Positions 6,150 to 47,502 of a stretch of DNA of 64,000 nt are shown piece after piece. Position 1 is the first letter of the stretch. Each line of letters begins with the position of its first letter. Source of the stretch: Octopus sinensis. Taxonomy: Eukaryota. The notes beneath the pieces were generated by a model. The model saw only the letters and a program-made list of their open reading frames with translations. It was not told where the DNA came from and searched no databases. The stretch lies in the NCBI RefSeq assembly GCF_006345805.1, contig NC_043015.1:20398001-20462000 (forward strand), read 5' to 3'. Made by a program: the position numbers and the translations under genes.

Positions 6150-6249
6150 NNNNNNNNNNNNNNNNNNNNNNNNNNNNNNNNNNNNNNNNNNNNNNNNNNN
6201 NNNNNNNNNNNNNNNNNNNNNNNNNNNNNNNNNNNNNNNNNNNNNNNNN
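6150..6249. other. Assembly gap (100 N)
   Basis: Run of N; the exact 100-nt length suggests a placeholder of unknown true size. Confidence 0.99.
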
Positions 6250-9194: not shown

Positions 9195-9545
9195 AGCTTT
9201 TATCTTTCATTTCTACCAGTCATGTGATTGCGGCCATAATGGGGCACTGCCTTGAAGAATTTTTTGTCGAATGACTCGACCCCGGTGCTGTTACTTTCAG
9301 AGCTTGGTACTTATTCTATCGGTCTTTTATGTCAGACCGCTAAGTTTCAGGTATGTAAGCAAACCAACACGGGTTGTCAAGCGGTAGTGGAGGATAATCA
9401 CACACACACAAACATAGATATACGACGAGCTTCTTTCAGTTTCCGTTTACCAAATCCACTCAAGGCTTTGGTTGACTTAAGGTTATAGTAGAAAACACTT
9501 GCCCAAGGTGCAACGCAGTGGCACTGAACCTGGAACCATGTGATT
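9195..9545 (-). mobile_element. Composite C/D SINE (head truncated)
   Basis: D module (gtacttattctatcgg, ggttgtcaagcg), CA tract and C module (caaatccactcaaggctttgg). Confidence 0.8.
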
Positions 9546-10139
9546 GGGGTACGTTCTGATAGTGTAGAATGTCAGTGCATTCCTAATGCAGTACTTCGCA
9601 TAGATGTTTGGTTATCTACAGAAACTATTCCAAGTCCGCTGGCGCAGAAACTCCAGGATTCCCACCGGCAAGAGCAGAGGGTGTTTTGGAGAACAACATG
9701 TAATACTAAATCGGTTCGGTGCAAAAAGAATCGACTAAATACTATAGTCTGATAAAGTACCACTCGATATATTCAACCTTGCATATTGAGTAACTTATCA
9801 CATGGAATTATTTACGTATAATGTGGTTAGAAACGGTGTAGTACAGAAACGATTGTAACTAACAATAATGTCATGCTATATTCATTTTGTCGTATAAACA
9901 CACACACGTGCGCGCGTGCATGTAATACGTACTTCCGTGTTTGATGTTGCGCGGTTTACCTTGTGAGTGATAGATTGTCAGAAACTGCTCAAATTTTCAG
10001 ATACGCATTCTTTTTAGTAACATTTTAATCCCGTTGTTGATAATTAAATAATATACAAATTAATCTATCCGTTTCTTCTTGGTTTGTGTTTGGTTTAGAC
10101 AGCGATTACTACTGAATACTCTTTGTAGAAAGGGCTAAT

Positions 10140-13356: not shown

Positions 13357-13980
13357 AAAGCAGCGACCTAGCAGAATCGTTAGCACGCCGGCAGAAATTC
13401 TTAGCCGTATTTCGCCCATCGCTACGTTCTGAGTTCAAATTCCGCCCAGGTCGACGTTACCTTTCCGTAAAATTATGTGCCAGTTGAACACTGGGGTCGA
13501 CTCATCCCTCACCTCCCCCAAGCTACCCTTGTGGAAAAACTTTGAAATGATAATAATTATTGTTATTAAGGCGGCGAGCAGGCAGAATGCTTAGCGGCAT
13601 TTCGTCCGTAATTACGTACTGAGTTCAATTTCCGCCACGGCTGAATTTACCTTTCATCCCTTCAGGGCAGTTAAAATAAGTACCAGCTGAACGCTGGAGT
13701 CGATGTAATCGGTTTCTCCTCTCCTCCAAATATCATGCCTTCTGCCTAGAGCAGAAACAATCATCAGTAAGACGGTGAGCGGGCAGGATCGTTAGCACGC
13801 TGGACGAAATGCTTAGCGGTATTTCGCCCATCGCTAGGTTCTGAGTTCAAATTACGCCGAGGTTGATTTTTGCCTTTCTTCCTTTCGGGGCGATAAATTA
13901 AGTAACGGTTGTGTACTGTGGTTGATGTAATCGACTTAACCCCTCCCCCCAAATTTCAGGCCTTGCTACTTTCGTAGAAA
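13357..13980 (+). mobile_element. Tandem trio of family A SINEs (13357-13547, 13568-13757, 13769-13980)
   Basis: Each starts aag(g/a)cgg(c/t)gagc-like, contains gttctgagttcaaatt and ends ...gaaa. They are separated and followed by ATT-type repeats. Confidence 0.85.
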
Positions 13981-13982
13981 CG

Positions 13983-14044
<62 letters not shown>

Positions 14045-17432: not shown

Positions 17433-17879
17433 TGGCACAAGGCCACACATACTCAGAGGAAGAATGAGATCAATTTCATCGAAGCCAATACTTGATTGGT
17501 TCTTATTTCATTATGAAAAATGATGAAAGTTTAATGTCTACCTTGATGGAATTTGAAATTAGAATGTAAAGGTGCGTTACTGCGTTTCTCAAACGTAGAC
17601 AGCGACAGCTTCAACGGATTTTTTCTTGTCAATCTCCGTGATAAAAAATAACTCCTCATTTCGGGACATTGGCAGCAACTTTTGGGGCAGAGGAAAGTCG
17701 ATTAAATCGATCCCCGTACTGAACGGGTACCTAATTTATCGAACCCCAAAACATGAAAGGTAAACTCGACCTCGAAGGAATTCGAACTCAGAACGTGAAG
17801 GGGCTGAAGAAATGCTGCTATGCATTTTGTCCAACGCGATCACAATTTTGCCAACTCGTTGCTTTTGATAATAATATTG

Positions 17880-17965
<86 letters not shown>

Positions 17966-18260
17966 AAGAAAAAGAAAAAGAAAAGAAGAAGAAGAAGAAG
18001 AAGAAGAAGAAGAAGAAGAAGAAGAAGAAGAAGAAGAAGAAGAAGAAGAAGAAGAAGAAGAAGAAGAAGAAGAAGAAGAAGAAGAAGAATGCCAGAAGTT
18101 CGAGAGGAGCGTTTAATCGATTACAGCGAATTAAGTTCCTGATTGAACCTTTATTTTGCCGACACCAGAGTTATGAAAAGTTAAGTCGATCTGATTGGGA
18201 TTTGAACGTAGAACATAGAGCCTGGAAAAATACCGCAAAGCACTTTGTTCGACGCAAACC
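17433..18260 (-). mobile_element. Cluster of minus-strand family A SINEs separated by (AAT)n(AAG)n
   Basis: Copies at ~17433-17570, ~17663-17865 and ~18090-18260 (gaaaggtaaactcgacctcgaaggaattcgaactcagaacg). Confidence 0.7.
17877..18088. repeat. Compound (AAT)n(AAG)n microsatellite
   Basis: Seen directly. Confidence 0.95.
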
Positions 18261-19101
18261 ATTGAGCTTAAAAATGATAATTATTAGGTTCTGTTACAAT
18301 AAAGTAGTGGTTGCATCAAAGGCTTCGGATAAATCGAGGCTGTCTTATAATCTGCATTATCGCTCTTTAGCGACATTGAATTCTTTTCACAAGGATATTG
18401 CATCATTCCTTGAAGATATATTTAGGTAGTTTAGTCGAGAAGGAAGTGGTGTGCTGCTCGTGACGATTTCCATGAGCTCCAAGACTAGTGAAAAAGAAGG
18501 ACGGAGGCAGGGAGGGAGTAAAGTAACGAATGAAAATAATTTTCTGAGTAGACGCATAACGAAGCGCCCCTATGTCAACGAAGACATCTGAGTCAATGAA
18601 TGGCGACTCACTCAGCTACAAATAACAACGAAATCGCTCAGCTTGCGAGAATTAGTAACCAAACCAGTCAAGTGACTAGAAAAGCAACAAACTCACTTAA
18701 CGTGCAAGAAAGAGTCAGCAAGCAACTCTTTACGTAGGTGTCGTTCAAAAATGAAGGACGTATAAAATAACGTTTGAAAACGCGTGCTGGTCATGGCCAG
18801 AACATTTGATAACATGTCCACTCATTCATGGTTGGCCTAGGGTTAAACAGCAACAGAATAATATCGAAATCAATTTTACAAAGACTACATTCGATAATAC
18901 AGTCCTAGATAGCCAATATTAGAAAGAAAAAAGAAAAAGGATGAACATTGATGAAATGCATTCAGCCATTCGTCTGCTCGATCGATTCTCATCTGAAGCT
19001 AATAAACAACAATTGTAGAGCAAAAATATCTAAGTATTAAATATAAAACATGTTTAAACTTTCTTATTTCATACTCTTTCTCGCTATTTGCCTGTCCCTC
19101 T

Positions 19102-19314
19102 ACGTATGTATGTATGTATGTATGTATGTATGTATGTATGTATGTATGTATGTATGTATGTATGTATGTATGTATTCATCTATCCATCTTTCTATCTATC
19201 CATGCATGCATGTATGTATATATTCATCTATCTATCTATCTGTCTGTCTGCCCGTCCATCTGTCTCTTCCCCTTTATCAATCTGTCTGTCTGTGCCAGTC
19301 TGTCTTTGCCACAC

Positions 19315-19402
<88 letters not shown>
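19102..19402. repeat. (TATG)n and (TCTA)n tetranucleotide arrays
   Basis: Seen directly. Similar arrays lie at ~24249-24530, ~44390-44510 and ~48240-48305. Confidence 0.95.
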
Positions 19403-19403
<1 letters not shown>

Positions 19404-19794
19404 GTTTTATCTATCTGTATTATATATCTATCTCTATTAACTACCCACCAACCTACCTGAATGAAAGAAAACAAAACAAGTGGCAATTTAGCTTTAAAAT
19501 ATTTCAATTGAATGATTAACTCTCTGAGTGACTAATGGAATAATTGACTAATTGGAATATTGATTGACTGATTTGTATGGAATCACTGTTAAATTAATTT
19601 GTTTGTCAAATCACACAAGAATACAAAAACCTTACAAAGGAGAATGAAGTATTTTGTCTTTTTAGAATAATCCTCGAAGTATCCATGTTTAGCGAGTGAA
19701 CAATCGCATAGATGTATATACTATTGTTGCCGACATCGATATGTGGTATATTCTCGTGAATAAACATTGATCGCTGGAAACGGTGAAGTTGCCC

Positions 19795-23889: not shown

Positions 23890-24249
23890 CATACATAATA
23901 TATATATATTTGCATATTTGTATATATAGGCGCATGCTTGGGTATGTGACACTTTGTTGTTGGGAAGCAGGCTTCTACCACACACCCAAGCAAGCATGCG
24001 CCTATATATACACATATGTGATATATATATATATATATCTATATATATATATATATATATATGCTGTAATGCTATTAGAACTATTTTCAATGTCATTATC
24101 CTTTAGATGACTTTTACTAATTGTAATTAACGTAATAATATTAGATATATTATGTGACAGAGTAACAGTTGAGAAAGACATATTCCTTACCACGTAAATA
24201 CAATATCTATCTATCTTTCTATCTGCTTGTCTGTTCATCCACCCATGTT

Positions 24250-24295
<46 letters not shown>

Positions 24296-24296
24296 C

Positions 24297-24385
<89 letters not shown>

Positions 24386-24404
24386 CCTGCCTACCTACCT
24401 ACCT

Positions 24405-24530
<126 letters not shown>

Positions 24531-25034
24531 ACTTTTTCTATCCATCTGTCTGTCTAGAAATTTATTAGTAAGTGTATATATATATATATATATATATATC
24601 AGTCCACACGCACGCACACACATACATGTATAATTCACAGACACACACGCGTGCGCGATGACTTGTATAATCAGATACATGATAAATTCGTATATAAAAA
24701 ATGCGTATATGTCCGCATTTACTTCAACATAATCATATTCTTGTTACTGCAAGACTTGTACGCATGTGTATGTGTGTGTGTGTCTGTATTTTGTGAGTTT
24801 GTGTGCGCTTTAAGAGCACTTAAGCTACAATATAGAAACAGGATGTCATACAAGTGGCTTCTTCAAAGAACGCCATGTACCGGAGCCAAAAAAAATATAA
24901 AAATGAAACGAACCTGCATATTAATCAAATATTGGCATAATCACACACCTCACTTGTCAATATACCATAAAAACCACAATTCAGAACAACTAACACATCA
25001 TATATGCATACTCAGTCACACATATATATATTGT

Positions 25035-25239
25035 TGTGTCTGGGGAGAGTCATTCTCTTTTAGTGCCTTATTATTTAACACACTCACAACTCACCAGCAA
25101 AGTTTCCACTCATTTACGTTGCAAGACGCAACGAAAATTTTAGGAAAAATAAATAAGTAAATGAGTGGAAATTTTGCCGGTGAGTTGTGAGTGTGTTAAA
25201 TAATAAGGCACTAAAAGAGAATGGCTCTCCTCAGACACA
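25035..25239. mobile_element. Fold-back element / MITE with ~83-bp arms
   Basis: 25035-25117 is reverse-complementary to 25157-25239 with few mismatches, around a 39-bp spacer. Confidence 0.8.
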
Positions 25240-25642
25240 AAATATGCTTCTACACACGAACACACATAAAGCATCTTGCAAACCAAATCCGAAAACGAAA
25301 TATGTGTGTGTGTGTGTGTATTTGTTTTGTGTGTATTTAGATATCTTAATTCTTTGGAAAATGACAATCTGATTTGCTGAGAACAAAACCGATTGTATTG
25401 TTATAGAGTAATAATAGCAGTTTACGGTGGGCATCAAGTATCATTTTATTTCTAACTACGGAAGTATTTGGTGGAGTAATGTAGTAATAATTCCCTCGGA
25501 CTCTCACGTTGTACTTCTTCATACTCTCTCATGTATCTAGCTTTGACTATAGTTCAATGGAATATGAGAGGCCGGTTCGTAGGTATACGATGTTTAGAGC
25601 GACGGTCGTAAAGATGTGGAAGTTATAATGTGTTTCTGATAA

Positions 25643-27412
25643 TGCAAGGACAAAATAATGGAAATAGCACTTTTGAGTTGACTATTTTCTTTTCTTTTGG
25701 TAATATGACAAATGTGAAACTGTTCTAGTGTATATATACGTGATGATGCGCATTATATATGCATTGTGGTTCATTATATAATATTGTCTGTTTGCTTAGC
25801 AGATATTTATATTTAAATAAGTTACATTGATTTACCTAACTGGTTTCTAAAGCTGATAAATGATGGGAGAGCAGATGGCTAGAGTATGTCATTAATATTG
25901 CTGAATTCATTAAGGTTTCGAGAGAACCAGTTTCTCAAATCATGTTACCATTCCAAACCAAGATAAAATCAAACTTTGGCAAGCAGAATTTTAGATAGTA
26001 AGCAACGCTCAGAGAGAGGGTCTTCAGAAAAGTGCAACGAATTCTGTCTAAAAGCCATCGAACCACTACAGCAAAAGTGATAGCAGGGCTAAATCATAGC
26101 CTTGCCAACTCTATGTCAATAAAAACCATTCGTCCTCACCTCCAGCTAGATACCATGGGGAGGCAACAATTGCTAAATCTCTCGTCTTTCGCCTCAACGA
26201 TAGTAAACAGAAAAAGTGGCGTCAACACAATCAGAAGTGGTCAATGGCTTAATGTCGTCTCTAATGAATCTTATTCACAATTTTTACCATGTGTTTACAA
26301 TGTGTTTGTTGGGGCAGAGATTGGTTTATTAAAAGGTGCAAACTGCATACACCGGACATGGGGAAACTTAAATGAGCTTCATGAGGTGAAGAAGAAGAAT
26401 GAAATAAACTGCATGTATTGGCTTACTCGTAAACAGACTAAATTCTATTATGAACAAGAGAACCACATTGTAACAATTTTTGATGTAGATACTGGTAAAA
26501 TAACTAGGCAAGTCAAAATGAATACTGGAGAGGGAAGATTTAAAATTATACATCCATACCACAGCAGTAAGCAGTGGTGATATTAACTTATGGACCAAAA
26601 AAGGAAAAACATCTGTTAAAAATATCTGGAGGCATTGACTTAAATTGTGTGCAACATGGTCCAGTACAAACGCATTTAATTGCCAGTGGAGGCAACGAGA
26701 ACCCTTTGAAATTATGGGACATTAATTGTCCTACAAGTCCTATTTTTGTATTTAAAAAATGTGTCTGAGAACTGGTTACTTCATTCCACAGTCTAGCAAA
26801 ATCATTACTGGTACTGAGTTATATCAGATACGACTACCAAAAACTGGCCATCAACTGAAGAAAGCACAGGCCTCCAAACCTGACTGCTTGATCTTATGCC
26901 GTGAATCATGGAGGTACTTCTGTGATGGTTTATGCAGCCATCTCGCAAAGTTCTCTTGACCTTTTAGTCGTTCTACATCGCAGAGATAACACCAAGGGTT
27001 CTCTAAGTATCTCTGTTGATCATGCTCGTCTTTTAGTTCCAAATACTGTACTCTGATGGTACAACACGTCACACATGGTTAATTTTATTCACAATTGGTA
27101 TCAAGAGCAGAAAAGCGTTGTAGACCACATGGATTCGGCGAGCCCTAACCGCACAATAGACAGATCTCAATATAATCGAACAGTTTTGGTGCATTTTGAA
27201 CTTGAGGGTCCGTTTCCCTTCACCAACGTTGCGGAGAGAACTGGGGCAGATTTTACTAAAAGAATAGCACAAAATTTCTCTAACAGCAGTTCAAAGCGTT
27301 TATGAGTCAATTCTTCGATGTATGAAATATGTGATTGAAGCCAAAGATGGACAACTCCATACTAAATATAACTTGCATTAGCAAGGTGTTTTCAGTATTT
27401 TGACCAACTCAT
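25643..27412 (+). mobile_element. Decayed Tc1-family DNA transposon interrupted by the WDR74 fragment
   Basis: Imperfect TIRs ggacaaaataatggaaa (25648-25664) and tttcagtattttgacc (~27390-27405). Transposase remnants: QRILSKSHRTTTAKV..LN, NVVSNES (first catalytic D region), VNHGGTSVMVYAAIS and DLNIIEQFW. Confidence 0.85.
26290..26836 (+). pseudogene. WDR74: Intronless, truncated WDR74/Nsa1 (WD40 ribosome-biogenesis factor) fragment inserted in a Tc1 element
   Basis: Translated blocks VFVGAEIGLLKG, TAVSSGDINLW, IASGGNENPLKLWD, KNVSENWL and FIPQSSKIITGTELYQIRL match, in order, recalled WDR74 motifs VWVGTETGILKG, TCVDSGILRVW, VATGGKENALKIWD, KNVRNDWL and FLPGSQKLVTCTGYHQVRV. It has frameshifts and a deletion of about 12 codons. 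Confidence 0.88.
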
Positions 27413-27446
27413 GGATGCAAACACGCATACATATGCATGCATATAT

Positions 27447-27541
<95 letters not shown>

Positions 27542-28623
27542 ACACACACACACACACTATATTATAATTATGCATATATATAAAAGCATATGTAATATGA
27601 GTAGATTATATATGCACACACACTGACACGCATATATATATATATACATATATATATATACATACGCACACATATGTGTATTCATATACATATCTATAGA
27701 AAGATAATTGTCATCTATCTTACATTACATGCATGCATTGAAAGGCATGTGTGTGAGTGGCTGTGCCTGTGTGAATGTGTGTTTCTACATGTATACACAC
27801 ACACATATGACATATTAAGGCATACACACACATATATATATATATATACGAATACACACGCACATATACGAATACACACATTTTACACATTGTGAGGTAT
27901 ATGTAGATCATTACCAGTTCTCATTATCCTTCAATGTCTCTGTCTCATACAATTGCACTATCTTACACACACACACACACACTGTTTCCAGCCGACTTCG
28001 TAACTCTTCGTATTCATTTTCCTTCTCCCCTCTTTGCATTCCCTCTGTCTCTGTCTCTCTATCCTCTTCCACACCCATTTCTCTTTTCTCTCCCCTCTCT
28101 CTCCTTCCATTATTCTTTCTCCTCTTCCGCCAGTTTCTTTCCTTCCCTCTCCTCTTCCCCCTCCTCCTATTCACTCTCCACTCCCACCTAAACACTCAAC
28201 CAAATATTAGAGTCTGTGGCCAATTCATTCTGGCAGGAAATACATTAAAGACTTTTATAGCGAATATCACAGACTTTTAACAGAAAATAACAACAAAAAC
28301 TGTAGAAACAACAACAACAACAGAAAAAACGTAAACAACAATAAAAATATCAACAATAATATCTGCAGGAGCAACAACACCGGTAGAAACATCAACATCA
28401 AGAAGAACAACGACAACAACAACAACATCATCATCATCATCAGCAGGTACAATCACAACTGCAAAGACAATAGCAATATCCAGAACAATAGCAGCAGCGG
28501 CAGCAGCAGCAGCAGCACCGACGACTATAACAACAAAACAAATATAAAGTAAAAATAATCCCGCCAAAAACAAAAAAAAAATCGAATTTTCTGAAACAAA
28601 TGTAAACTATTGAATATTATGTT

Positions 28624-29649: not shown

Positions 29650-30264
29650 CGCACATGCATACACAAAGGAAAATTGTCCTAACACACACCACCAAAGACA
29701 TAGACTCTACACACACACACACACACACGTGTTATGTGTATATGCATGTATATATGTGTGTATGTGTGTGTATAACATTTCCTATAGAATTTCAACCAAG
29801 TTGCATTTTCATTAGTAATTGCACACGGAAATGGGAAGACAGAATCAACAAGTCTTGAAAAGAGAGCTGTTGTGAGTTCGACCGCCCGCCCGCCTCCTAC
29901 TCCTCTCACAACCAATCAACTGCACACACGCACCAACACTCACCTTCTCCTCACCCCTCACTCCTACTTGTTTAATATTTAAAGTTTACACATTGCTTGG
30001 AAAAGTAAACGAACAGGAATCAAGAACAAAAAAAATGGATAAAAATGAAAAGAAAATATACAATATAGGATCAGACAGACACACATACACACACATTTAT
30101 ATACAGGGAGGTAGGTAGAAGGGCAGATAAGCATATAGTTTGATAAATGATGAGAGATAAACAATGAGATATGGATAGTTAGACACACAGACAAACAGAT
30201 AGATAAATAAACAAGCTACATCGATTGAGAGATAGACAGACAGATAGATAGATAGAGAAATATA

Positions 30265-30514
30265 TATACTCTTTTACTGGTTTTAGTCAGTTGAGTGTGG
30301 CCATGCTGGAGCACCGCTTTTAGTCGAGCAAATCGACACCAGAGCTTATTCTTTGTAAGCTCAGTACTTATTCTATCGGTTTCTTGTTGCTGAACCGCTA
30401 AATTACGGGGACGTAAACACACCATCATCTGTTATCAAGCGATGTTAGGGGGAGGGTAAATACAGACACACAAACATATACACACACATACATATATATA
30501 CACATATATGCAAT

Positions 30515-30596
<82 letters not shown>

Positions 30597-30775
30597 TATA
30601 TATATATACATACGACGGCTTCTTTTAGTTTCTGTCTATCAAATCCATTTACAAGGGTGTGGTCAGTCCGAGGCTATAGTAGAAGACACTTGCTCAGGTG
30701 CCACACAGTGGGACTGAACCTGGAACCATGTGTTTCGTAAGCAAGCTACTTACCATACAGCCACCCCTACTCCTA
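30265..30775 (-). mobile_element. Composite C/D SINE with internal (TA)n
   Basis: D module ~30265-30470, TA tract, C module ~30612-30775. Confidence 0.85.
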
Positions 30776-30806
30776 CATATATATATGTATATATATATAT
30801 GTGTGT

Positions 30807-42544: not shown

Positions 42545-42992
<448 letters not shown>

Positions 42993-43530
42993 ATATAATA
43001 TGTTTATTTATACACACGTGTGTATACATAACTATTTATATACACATATCTACGTAAACAGAAGTATATAATACTCTTACATTTAGTTGGTGTGTGCGTG
43101 CGGGTGTATGTCTGCATGTGTGTTTGTGTGCGTGAGTGTTTGTATGAGGGCAAAAGTTTCTACATGATATATATCTAAACAGAACAGAGACACACACTCA
43201 TATAAAGTTACAAAAGAAGACGAATGCTCCAGCCTCCCACTCAACACAACACACACACACAAAACGACAACAGCAACAACAACAACAAACCAGCCGTTAT
43301 TTTGCGGCTTTAATGGCATAAAAATCTAGCGCACTTTTCATTGGTTTCATTTTATTTATTATTATTATTTTTTTTGTGTGTGTGTGTTTTTATATTTCAC
43401 AATACATTTATATCGCTGTTATTGTTATAGCAACAATCTCCGAGTTGTCAGCCATAATCACATCTTATTCTGTACATCCTTAGATAAATCGTTCAACATG
43501 TATTGATTAATATTATTATTATTATTATTG

Positions 43531-45514: not shown

Positions 45515-46125
45515 CTCTTGGCACAAGGTCCGAAAGTTTGGGAGAGGGGGCCAGTCGATTAGATTGACTTCAGTGTTTCACTGGTACTTAATTTATAGAC
45601 CCCGAAAGGATGAAAGGCAAAGTCGACCTCGGCGGAATTAGAACTCAGAACGTAAAGACAGACGAAATACTGCTAAGCATTTCGCTCGGCATGCTAATGT
45701 TTCTGCTAGCTTGCCGCCTTACAAAATGAATAGATATTTATTTATTTCTTTATTGCCCACAGGGGGCTAAACATAGAGGGGACAAACAACGATCCAAGTG
45801 CGTAACTGGTATTTATTTAATCGAAGTCGACCTCGTCGGAATTTGAAGTCACAACGTAAAGATAGACAAAATACCTATTTCTTTACTACCCAAAAGGGGC
45901 GACACACAGAAGGGACAAACAAGGACAGACAAACGGATTAAGTCGATTATATCGATTATATCGACCCCAGTGCGTAACTGGTACTTATTTAATCCACCCC
46001 GAAAGGATGAAAGGCAAAGTCGACCTCGGCGGAATTTGAACTCAGAACGTAGCGGTGGATAAAATACCGCTAAGCATTTAGCACGGTGTGCTATCGATTC
46101 TGCCAGCTCGCTGCCTTAAAAAATG
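45515..46125 (-). mobile_element. Tandem minus-strand family A SINEs with partial internal duplication
   Basis: cccgaaaggatgaaaggcaaagtcgacctcggcggaatt occurs at ~45601 and ~45998. A further partial copy lies at ~45795-45860. Confidence 0.85.
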
Positions 46126-46492: not shown

Positions 46493-47235
46493 TAAGAAAG
46501 TTTGTTTGGTAAAGCACGTGGGTGAGTATATAAGAAAATAGTAAAGTGTGAAAAAACGACAGAAGGCTTAAATGTTAAAATATATATATATTTGTGTCAA
46601 AATGTCTGGAGAATATTGGAAAAATTTTTTTTCCCCTTTCCTTAAAATGACATAATTTTAAAATTTTTAAAGAAATTACCGGTTTCGCGTGTAGCTTTTC
46701 AAATTTCTTGTGACGTTATGTTTATATTGCATGGAATTATCGTTGTTTTTATTTCCAGGAGATTTCTAAATAAGGGGAGGTAGTGAGTGATTTTTTCCGG
46801 TGTAGGGGAGATAATCGCTTAAAATTTTTTTTTTTTCCCTTTTCCTTGTTAATTTCTCTGTGTCAGTATGTTCGGATGGTTGAGTCTGGGTTTGTACTTT
46901 TCAATGAAGAATGTTTCCTTGTTCAGTCTCATTTGTGTTGATGAGTGGAACCTAACCCGGGACCACGTGAATGTGAATCAAGCTTCCTACAACACATATT
47001 TATATATATATATATATTTATTTATTTATTTGTGTCTCTGTTTTTGTCCCCCACAACATCGCTTGGCAACCGATGTTGGTGTGTTTACACGTCTCTGTAA
47101 CTTACCGGTTCTGCAAAAGAGACCGATAAAATCAGTACTAGGATTACAATTAATAAGTCCTGCCATCGATTTTTTCGACTAAAGGCGGTGCTCCAGCATG
47201 GCTGCAGTCAAATGACTGAAACAAGTAACAGAATA
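46311..47235 (+). mobile_element. Composite C/D SINE interrupted by a PLE fragment and an inverted head copy
   Basis: C 46311-~46455, PLE 46490-46943, inverted head 46944-47002, D ~47035-47235. Confidence 0.8.
46490..46943 (-). mobile_element. PLE 3'-end fragment inserted in a SINE microsatellite
   Basis: Minus strand QMRLNKETFFIEKYKPRLN resembles the PLE GIY-YIG C-terminus (R..KE..FI.K..P.LN), followed by AT-rich UTR-like sequence. Confidence 0.55.
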
Positions 47236-47502
47236 AAAGAACATAGGAATAGAACGCTGTGGTTTAGCCATAGATTCTCTTTGTAGTTGAGATTTTTGTC
47301 GTATTCGTATTAACTGTACGCAAACACTCACTGATTTTAGTAATTAATGTATAGCACTAACGATTGTATTGTTAAGCAAATATGCCAATAGAGTGATTGT
47401 TGTTCACAGTAATTTTCAGAATAAGTCTTTATAACTGTCTGTCTGTCCCTCTTCAAGTGCATTTTTCTGTCTTCCACGTCTCTCTGTCAGTGCGGGGCGC
47501 AC

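What the first reader, a model, noticed from the sequence alone, without database searches (positions are those of the whole stretch)
25643..27412. Tc1 transposon carrying a captured intronless WDR74 fragment with 5-bp junction repeats
Seen: the transposase reads ...NVVSNESYSQFLP, is interrupted by 550 bp, then resumes PKTG...KPDCL..VNHGGTSVMV, the expected continuation after the first catalytic Asp. TACCA sits at both junctions (26285-26289 and 26835-26839). The insert covers roughly the N-terminal half of WDR74 with no introns and no poly(A), and is cut off at the 3' end. Established: gene-fragment capture by TIR elements (Pack-type) occurs but is uncommon in animals. Inference: capture by microhomology-mediated template switching or gap repair from an mRNA/cDNA, rather than ordinary LINE retroposition. 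If further copies exist, this is a mobile Pack-Tc1 family.
Basis: partly seen in the sequence, partly recalled or inferred. Interest (0 to 1): 0.78.

Follow-up and report, generated by a model that had tools for sequence, protein, structure and literature searches.

The report
Spliced WDR74 cDNA patch in dead Tc1
A decayed Tc1-type transposon in an octopus genome carries a two-piece, intron-free, non-functional copy of part of the ribosome-assembly gene WDR74, most likely pasted in from reverse-transcribed mRNA when a DNA break was repaired; this kind of event is known, and nothing shows a new mobile gene-carrying transposon.

Summary
The core observation holds. A Tc1-like transposase remnant is interrupted by a WDR74 fragment in the same orientation. 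The fragment aligns colinearly to the spliced CDS of Octopus WDR74 (92.5% identity to O. bimaculoides, 89.4% to O. vulgaris). Six introns present in all three cephalopod parent genes examined are precisely absent, so the RNA origin is shown.

Three details of the finding are wrong.
- The 29 nt right of the "3' junction" (26837-26865, read as transposase "PKTGHQLKK") are WDR74 last-exon CDS 932-960. They match O. bimaculoides 27/29, and both mismatches equal the Argonauta state.
- The insert is therefore bipartite (CDS ~10-602 plus 932-960, window 26288-26865). Tc1 resumes at about 26866, with about 12 residues missing.
- Both TACCA copies overlap WDR74-derived bases, and such 5-mer sharing occurs in 7-9% of random junction pairs. 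It is not a target-site duplication.

There is no poly(A). The copy is a neutrally decaying pseudogene.

Best reading (0.5): capture of reverse-transcribed mRNA at a double-strand break (RMDR, class-2 templated insertion). The main rival is a LINE-made retrocopy later trimmed by deletions. Copy number could not be tested, so a mobile Pack-Tc1 family is unsupported.

The parts
25642..26287 (+). Left part of the Tc1-like element. The clear transposase reading is 26002-26286 (...RTTTAKVIAGL...WLNVVSNESYSQFL). The first catalytic Asp is replaced by Asn. The 5' boundary is only approximate.
   Evidence: Translation. SB100X alignment W36-F50. TIR alignment is no better than shuffles, 550/2000.
26285..26289 (+). 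First TACCA. It straddles the Tc1/WDR74 junction. A26286 and C26288-A26289 can be read as WDR74 CDS 8 and 10-11.
   Evidence: CATGTG at 26288-26293 matches Argonauta CACGTG (CDS 10-15), with a CpG-to-TpG change.
26288..26835 (+). WDR74 piece A: spliced CDS ~10-602, that is exons 1-6 plus the first 8 nt of exon 7. Exon-exon joins lie at 26335|26336, 26442|26443, within the 14-nt deletion at 26560|26561, 26615|26616, 26760|26761 and 26827|26828. Indels relative to the parents: +TT at 26294-95, a 14-nt deletion at 26560/61, +1 near 26609-10, +1 near 26752, and a 35-nt deletion at 26777/78.
   Evidence: Alignments to the spliced CDS of O. vulgaris, O. bimaculoides and A. hians. Parent exon maps.
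26836..26836 (+). One unassigned base (A) at the join of pieces A and B. The parents have G at both CDS 603 and CDS 931, which gives a TG microhomology at the jump.
26835..26839 (+). Second TACCA. It is T (CDS 602) + A (unassigned) + CCA (CDS 932-934). It lies inside the WDR74-derived insert, not at a Tc1 junction.
26837..26865 (+). WDR74 piece B: last-exon CDS 932-960.
   Evidence: Matches: 25/29 to O. vulgaris, 27/29 to O. bimaculoides, and every mismatch equals the Argonauta base. In a control using the junction sequence with piece A and one TACCA removed (which includes piece B), 0 of 19,663 random window segments reached its match score to CDS 603-1155: 20.5 against a maximum of 14.5.
26866..27413 (+). 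Right part of the Tc1-like element. The transposase reading QASKPDCLIL / AVNHGGTSVMVY... / ...DLNIIEQFW...KDGQLHTKY runs to about 27369, with 2 frameshifts and 2 stops. The 3' boundary is approximate.
   Evidence: SB100X alignment, residues 64-203. Translation.

Best explanation
A double-strand break inside an already inactive Tc1-like copy was repaired by end joining. The repair captured reverse-transcribed WDR74 mRNA. This is RT-product-mediated DSB repair, also described as a class-2 templated sequence insertion or an endonuclease-independent retro-insertion.

Shown:
- The donor was spliced WDR74 mRNA.
- The patch consists of CDS ~10-602 joined to CDS 932-960, in sense orientation.
- It has no poly(A) and no target-site duplication.
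- It has since decayed neutrally.

Inferred:
- About 36 nt of Tc1 were lost at the break.
- cDNA synthesis started internally near CDS 960. It started either from the right-hand DNA end or as a free cDNA, and it ran towards the 5' end of the mRNA.
- The 328-nt skip (CDS 604-931, TG microhomology) is either a template jump during that synthesis or a later deletion.
- The ends were sealed with no more than a few nucleotides of microhomology.
- Tc1 was only the landing site.
For: - Six introns at conserved positions in O. vulgaris, O. bimaculoides and Argonauta hians WDR74 are precisely absent.
- The insert is truncated at both ends: it starts 7-9 nt after the ATG and stops at CDS 960 of 1155. 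No A or T run of 8 or more lies within 25500-27500.
- Piece B is WDR74, not Tc1. The flanks therefore do not abut, and SB100X residues 51-62 have no counterpart. This is a target micro-deletion instead of a duplication.
- The TACCA pair is explained by chance, at 7-9%.
- The A/B join shows a 2-nt microhomology plus one odd base.
- The same architecture has been produced experimentally: partial spliced Pcnt and Inadl cDNAs at Cas9 breaks, without poly(A), often with microhomology, sometimes multi-fragment (PMC4516963).
- It has also been catalogued in humans as class-2 TSIPs (PMC5110952).
- Retrocopy-specific substitutions are spread evenly over codon positions (7/11/6), and the copy carries five indels. 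It is a pseudogene.
Against: - No uninterrupted copy of this Tc1 family could be obtained. The size of the target deletion and the junction microhomologies rest on alignment to Sleeping Beauty and to one 47%-identical octopus relative.
- Every atypical feature could also arise from an ordinary retrocopy by later deletions. Large deletions may occur in this copy, since the 328-nt gap could be one.
- By mammalian experience, LINE-made retrocopies greatly outnumber repair patches. This prior is from my own knowledge, not from a tool result.
Confidence: 0.5

Rival explanations
1. This is an ordinary LINE-mediated (TPRT) processed pseudogene of WDR74 that landed in the Tc1 copy. It was 5'-truncated at CDS ~10. 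It later lost CDS 604-931 in one deletion. A second deletion removed CDS 961 through the poly(A), the 3' target-site duplication and about 36 nt of Tc1.
For: - The copy is intronless and in sense orientation. 5' truncation is typical of TPRT.
- The copy is old: 4-6% private substitutions, possibly predating the O. bimaculoides/O. vulgaris split.
- It already shows 14-nt and 35-nt deletions, so more deletions are plausible.
- Such retrocopies are far more common than repair patches in well-studied genomes (my own knowledge).
Against: - It needs two additional large deletions.
- One of them must remove all poly(A) and the duplication, yet reach only a few tens of nt into Tc1.
- No A-rich remnant is left.
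- No L1-type target motif is evident at the left junction (direct reading).
Confidence: 0.3
2. This is transposon-linked capture, a single-copy Pack-Tc1. After excision or breakage of an active Tc1, gap repair copying the element back was interrupted and switched template onto a WDR74 cDNA. The result is a chimeric element that could in principle be mobilised in trans.
For: - The patch sits inside the element with both element halves retained. It is in the same orientation, and piece A continues the transposase reading frame into a 182-aa ORF (26032-26580).
- Template switching with short microhomology is the accepted origin of animal Pack-TIRs (PMC8277862).
- A two-segment patch fits serial template switches.
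Against: - Gap-filling Pack-TIRs copy genomic DNA, usually from nearby in cis. Here the template was spliced RNA.
- The published pipeline excludes intronless captures as retroduplicates.
- TIRs are not detectable.
- Invariant Tc1 motifs (DE, HGGG, VWG, DNDPKH, SPDLNPIE) are much more degraded than the 4-6% decay of the insert would predict. This suggests Tc1 was already dead at the time.
- No second copy lies in the window, L001, L002 or L003.
Confidence: 0.12
3. This is a multicopy, mobile Pack-Tc1 family that carries the WDR74 fragment around the genome.
For: None directly. Copy number simply could not be measured with the tools available.
Against: - The points against the single-copy Pack-Tc1 reading apply here too.
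- No further Octopus protein with WDR74 similarity, other than the parent-gene cluster, was returned by the protein searches.
- None of the window's chimeric ORFs is in the 15-billion-protein collection.
Confidence: 0.04

Closest known systems
[quoted passage not shown] 2015, PMC4516963), also described as class-2 templated sequence insertions (Onozawa/Aplan, PMC5110952) and as endonuclease-independent retro-insertion
   Same: - Partial, internally primed, spliced cDNA of a cellular gene.
- No poly(A) and no target-site duplication.
- Truncation at both ends and a small loss of target DNA.
- Short microhomology or an odd base at the joins.
- Multi-fragment patches are also known in those studies.
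   Different: - This is an ancient, fixed germline event in a cephalopod, not an induced break in mouse or human cells.
- Both fragments come from one mRNA, with a 328-nt skip.
LINE-mediated processed pseudogene (target-primed reverse transcription)
   Same: Intronless copy of a multi-exon gene, non-functional, decaying neutrally, 5'-truncated.
   Different: No poly(A), no 3' UTR and no target-site duplication. The 3' end is truncated at CDS 960, and target DNA is deleted, not duplicated.
Pack-TIR / Pack-MULE transduplication (Tan et al. 2021, PMC8277862)
   Same: A host-gene fragment lies between the two halves of a TIR-type DNA transposon. The breakpoints are internal to the element. The mechanism is probably independent of transposition.
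   Different: - The captured sequence derives from spliced RNA, not genomic DNA.
- The TIRs are not demonstrable.
- Copy number is unknown.
- The field's own filter would classify it as a retroduplicate.
Tc1/mariner superfamily, Tc1-like (Sleeping Beauty as the solved reference)
   Same: Recognisable W.NV.S(D/N)E, HGG.S.M and DLN.IE..W blocks in the right order and spacing.
   Different: - The catalytic Asp is replaced, and there are 2 frameshifts and 2 stops.
- About 12 residues are missing at the patch.
- There is no Pfam hit and there are no detectable TIRs.
- At about 1.2 kb without the patch, it is shorter than typical autonomous Tc1 elements.

Membership tests
Processed (RNA-derived) gene copy | Introns of the parent gene are precisely absent | tested here: met
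   Five exon-exon joins are read directly; the sixth (CDS 284/285) lies inside a 14-nt deletion with no intron sequence. The introns are 1.0-5.9 kb in O. vulgaris, at identical CDS positions in O. bimaculoides and A. hians.
Processed (RNA-derived) gene copy | 3' poly(A) tract | tested here: not met
   The insert ends at CDS 960 of 1155. No A or T run of 8 or more lies in 25500-27500.
LINE/TPRT retrocopy | Target-site duplication flanking the insert | tested here: not met
   The only candidate is TACCA. It overlaps WDR74-derived bases at both copies, and its second copy is internal to the insert. The chance rate for such a shared 5-mer is 7-9%.
Class-2 templated insertion / RMDR | Micro-deletion of the target instead of a duplication | tested here: inconclusive
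   SB100X residues 51-62 have no counterpart. An octopus Tc1 relative has PTTG.VYVWRQPN at this position. No same-family consensus is available.
Class-2 templated insertion / RMDR | Microhomology or non-templated bases at the junctions | tested here: inconclusive
   The A/B join has a TG microhomology plus one odd base. The two Tc1 junctions cannot be scored without the empty site.
Tc1/mariner element | DD(E/D) transposase homology | tested here: met
   SB100X catalytic domain at E 2.2e-5 and 6.3e-4. Pfam gives no hit, so the match is weak. The catalytic residues are mutated.
Tc1/mariner element | Terminal inverted repeats flanked by a TA duplication | tested here: not met
   The best end-to-end inverted match is 14/17 nt, score 11 against a shuffle mean of 10.0, and 550/2000 shuffles do as well or better. 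TA is present on the left (25640-41) but not clearly on the right.
Pack-TIR (transduplicating DNA transposon) | Captured segment copied from genomic DNA of the parent locus (introns or flanks retained) | tested here: not met
   The segment is intronless. The Pack-TIR pipeline discards such cases (PMC8277862).
Pack-TIR (transduplicating DNA transposon) | Further copies sharing the same junctions (mobility) | not testable with these tools
   No cephalopod genome can be searched by DNA here. There is no second copy in the 64-kb window or in L001-L003.
WDR74 / Nsa1 | Specific sequence similarity beyond generic WD40 repeats | tested here: met
   Human WDR74 at E 1.3e-13 against 4.6e-7 for the next WD40 protein. 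Nucleotide identity of 89-92.5% to Octopus WDR74 CDS.

The most novel reading that the evidence does not exclude
The chimera is a Pack-Tc1 created when gap repair of a then-active Tc1 switched template onto a WDR74 cDNA. It was subsequently mobilised, so Octopus genomes carry a small family of transposons ferrying an in-frame transposase-WDR74 fusion. This would be a route of gene-fragment capture by cut-and-paste elements that current Pack-TIR surveys filter out by design.
Probability: 0.05. Interest if true: 0.7.

Novelty: new member of a known kind. Interest (0 to 1): 0.3.

Why it matters
- It is a clean, datable natural example in a cephalopod of a spliced-mRNA patch that lacks every hallmark of LINE integration. 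It is bipartite and internally primed. It adds an invertebrate germline case to a phenomenon documented mainly at nuclease-induced breaks in mouse and as rare polymorphisms in humans.
- It is a practical warning. A short junction repeat and a plausible-looking resumption of the host reading frame misplaced the junction by 31 nt. Polarising with an outgroup ortholog settled it.
- It has no evident function. The copy is a neutrally decaying pseudogene.

Tried and rejected
**Searches that led nowhere**
- The search for homologous proteins with the conceptual WDR74 fragment and with the joined transposase returned nothing, because the queries were too decayed for the word filter. The parent was reached instead through the exhaustive representative search.
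- Pfam scans of the transposase pieces gave no family, even at E 10.
- The TIR search found nothing above shuffles.
- There is no second copy of the element or the insert in the window. There is no same-family Tc1 in L001, L002 or L003. Only a 47%-identical relative turned up in L003.
- An exact look-up of eight window ORFs, including both junction-spanning ORFs, in the 15-billion-protein collection found none.

**Hypothesis held for a while, then rejected**
- I considered that 26837-26865 is native Tc1 that happens to resemble WDR74 exon 10 and guided the capture.
- I rejected it because the segment is 27/29 identical to O. bimaculoides WDR74, and at every mismatch to either Octopus it carries the Argonauta base.
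- A residual hint remains. An octopus Tc1 relative reads P-T-T-G where piece B reads P-K-T-G. Some homeology between the lost Tc1 bases and CDS 932-942 may therefore have helped annealing. This stays untested.

**Other ideas rejected or not tried**
- A cryptic-splice origin of the 604-931 skip: a GT is present at CDS 603, but no AG precedes CDS 932.
- I did not scan metagenome or viral contigs for the junctions. Those collections are not expected to hold octopus DNA, and a negative result would carry no weight.

Full report
**What is in the sequence**

Window 25642-27413 reads on the + strand as a decayed Tc1-type transposase. The left part ends ...WLNVVSNESYSQFL(P) at 26289. The right part reads QASKPDCLIL / AVNHGGTSVMVY... 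/ ...DLNIIEQFW...KDGQLHTKY, with two frameshifts and two stops.

Joined, the two parts hit only one solved structure, the catalytic domain of Sleeping Beauty SB100X. The E-value is 2.2e-5, or 6.3e-4 when the nine disputed residues are left out.

Pfam finds nothing. The two ends show no inverted repeat better than shuffled sequence. "Tc1-like remnant" is therefore justified, but its outer boundaries are not.

TACCA is indeed at 26285-26289 and 26835-26839, and also at 26557.

**The insert is WDR74 and comes from spliced RNA**

- The conceptual translation hits human WDR74 residues 10-208 at E 1.3e-13. The next WD40 protein scores 4.6e-7.
- An exhaustive search with the first 96 codons found one close protein (73% identity, E 7e-39). 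It is WDR74 of Octopus vulgaris. Its 90% cluster also holds O. sinensis and O. bimaculoides WDR74.
- I fetched the parent loci of O. vulgaris (L001), Argonauta hians (L002) and O. bimaculoides (L003) and derived exact exon maps. All three have ten coding exons, with introns at the same CDS positions.
- The window aligns colinearly to the spliced CDS from about nt 10 to nt 602. It crosses six exon-exon junctions with no intron sequence. One of them falls inside a 14-nt deletion. In O. vulgaris these introns measure 5882, 1429, 1433, 2963, 1050 and 1346 bp.
- Identity over 573 comparable sites is 92.5% to O. bimaculoides, 89.4% to O. vulgaris and 78.2% to Argonauta.
- No other WDR74 piece lies in the window, and there is no A or T run of 8 or more between 25500 and 27500.

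**The 3' junction was misplaced**

BLASTN of the region against the parent locus gave an unexpected extra hit. Window 26837-26865, directly right of the supposed junction, matches the last exon of WDR74 (CDS 932-960) at 25/29.

As a control, I joined the flanks with piece A and one TACCA removed; this sequence includes piece B. None of 19,663 random 121-nt window segments reached its match score against CDS 603-1155: 20.5 against a maximum of 14.5.

I first weighed two readings: native Tc1 with a chance homeology that guided the capture, or a second WDR74 piece. The outgroups settle it.
- The segment is 27/29 identical to O. bimaculoides.
- At all four differences from O. vulgaris, and at both differences from O. 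bimaculoides, the window carries the Argonauta base.
- In the WDR74 frame it reads AKNWPSTEES, against O. bimaculoides AKNWPSAEES.

It is therefore WDR74.

Tc1 resumes at about 26866, and SB100X residues 51-62 have no counterpart. A 47%-identical Tc1 relative lies by chance downstream of O. bimaculoides WDR74. At this position it reads LFPTTG.VYVWRQPNEAFEPDC. This shows what kind of sequence is missing.

**The junctions**

- **Left.** CATGTG (26288-93) corresponds to CDS 10-15 (Argonauta CACGTG, with a CpG-to-TpG change). It is followed by a 2-nt insertion and then TAC AAT GTG TTT = YNVF, the Argonauta state. The 5' UTR, the ATG and 7-9 further bases are therefore absent, and the first TACCA straddles the join.
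- **A/B join.** Piece A ends at T26835 (CDS 602) and piece B starts at C26837 (CDS 932). The parents have TG at both 602-603 and 930-931. A26836 is a substitution or an untemplated base.
- **TACCA.** The second TACCA is thus internal to the insert. A shared 5-mer between two 12-nt windows 550 nt apart occurs in 8.9% of random trials in the window and 6.8% in L001. The TACCA pair carries no information.

**State and age of the copy**

Substitutions private to the copy number 24-25 of 573 sites. They are spread over codon positions 7/11/6. Changes on the gene lineages concentrate at third positions, for example 55 of 86.

With five indels and the 328-nt gap, the copy is a pseudogene.

At nine sites the copy shares the Argonauta base while both Octopus genes share a different one. 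Only about two such sites would be expected from chance reversion (my own estimate). This suggests the copy arose before the O. bimaculoides/O. vulgaris split, and predicts an ortholog in both species.

The invariant Tc1 motifs look far more eroded than 4-6% divergence would give. That is weak evidence that the transposon was already dead when the patch arrived.

**Mechanism**

The architecture has these features:
- a partial spliced cDNA with an internal 3' end;
- no poly(A) and no duplication;
- a small loss of target DNA;
- a two-segment patch joined at a 2-nt microhomology.

This is what Ono et al. obtained at Cas9 breaks in mouse zygotes: spliced Pcnt and Inadl fragments, no poly(A), microhomology, and sequential multi-fragment capture (PMC4516963). 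It is also what Onozawa and Aplan call class-2 templated sequence insertions in humans (PMC5110952).

I therefore favour capture of reverse-transcribed WDR74 mRNA during end joining of a break in a dead Tc1 copy (0.5).

The main rival (0.3) is an ordinary LINE retrocopy later trimmed by two large deletions. It cannot be excluded, because the copy is old and deletion-prone. It does require one deletion to remove all of the 3' CDS, UTR, poly(A) and duplication while reaching only a few tens of bases into Tc1.

Transposon-linked gap repair, a single-copy Pack-Tc1, gets 0.12. A mobile family gets 0.04. The animal Pack-TIR survey attributes captures to template switching onto genomic DNA and deliberately discards intronless captures as retroduplicates (PMC8277862). 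Nothing here shows mobility.

**Limits**

No cephalopod genome can be searched by DNA with these tools. Copy number, the orthologous loci and the Tc1 family consensus remain untested. These would fix the empty site, the junction microhomologies and the relative ages.

The species of the window is not known. The copy is closest to O. bimaculoides WDR74.

**Verdict**

The RNA origin is proven. The TACCA argument and the Pack-Tc1 reading are not supported. This is a new example of a known kind of event, of moderate-to-low interest.

Noticed in passing
window 25034-25240: A near-perfect hairpin: two 84-nt arms, 95% complementary, with a 39-nt loop. It lies about 400 bp upstream of the Tc1 remnant. 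It could be a MITE-like or foldback element. No relation to the Tc1 was established.
   Followed up: partly
L003 ~24800-25060 (minus strand), 300-550 bp downstream of the O. bimaculoides WDR74 stop codon: A second, better-preserved Tc1-like transposase fragment (…LFPTTG*VYVWRQPNEAFEPDCPLPNVKHGGRSVMIWG…). It is 47% identical to the window's copy over 51 aa. No counterpart was found in the 3 kb downstream of O. vulgaris WDR74. It may lie in the WDR74 3' UTR, antisense.
   Followed up: partly
window 26032-26580: A 182-aa ORF runs in frame from the transposase remnant into WDR74 piece A. It is not found in the 15-billion-protein collection. It is most likely a chance read-through.
   Followed up: partly
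window 9217-9547, 13581-14006, 30264-30787, 42789-43001, 45876-46122, 46998-47237 and others: Interspersed repeats of about 170-430 bp, possibly SINE-like, are shared at 70-89% identity with the introns and flanks of the O. vulgaris WDR74 locus (136 hits). This is consistent with an Octopus origin of the window.
   Followed up: no
L001, L002, L003 (WDR74 CDS): WDR74 evolves asymmetrically. Polarised by Argonauta and the retrocopy, there are 17 O. vulgaris-specific changes against 5 O. bimaculoides-specific changes over 573 sites. MRP-S22 is the conserved upstream neighbour in all three species.
   Followed up: partly
window 6150-6249: A run of 100 N, which is an assembly gap.
   Followed up: no
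window 17753-18142 and throughout (e.g. 27430-27700, 19050-19520, 24169-24633): Very dense microsatellites: (TA)n, (CA)n, (TATC/CTAT)n-type runs and trinucleotide runs giving poly-N/K/R ORFs. They inflate chance repeat matches in this window.
   Followed up: no
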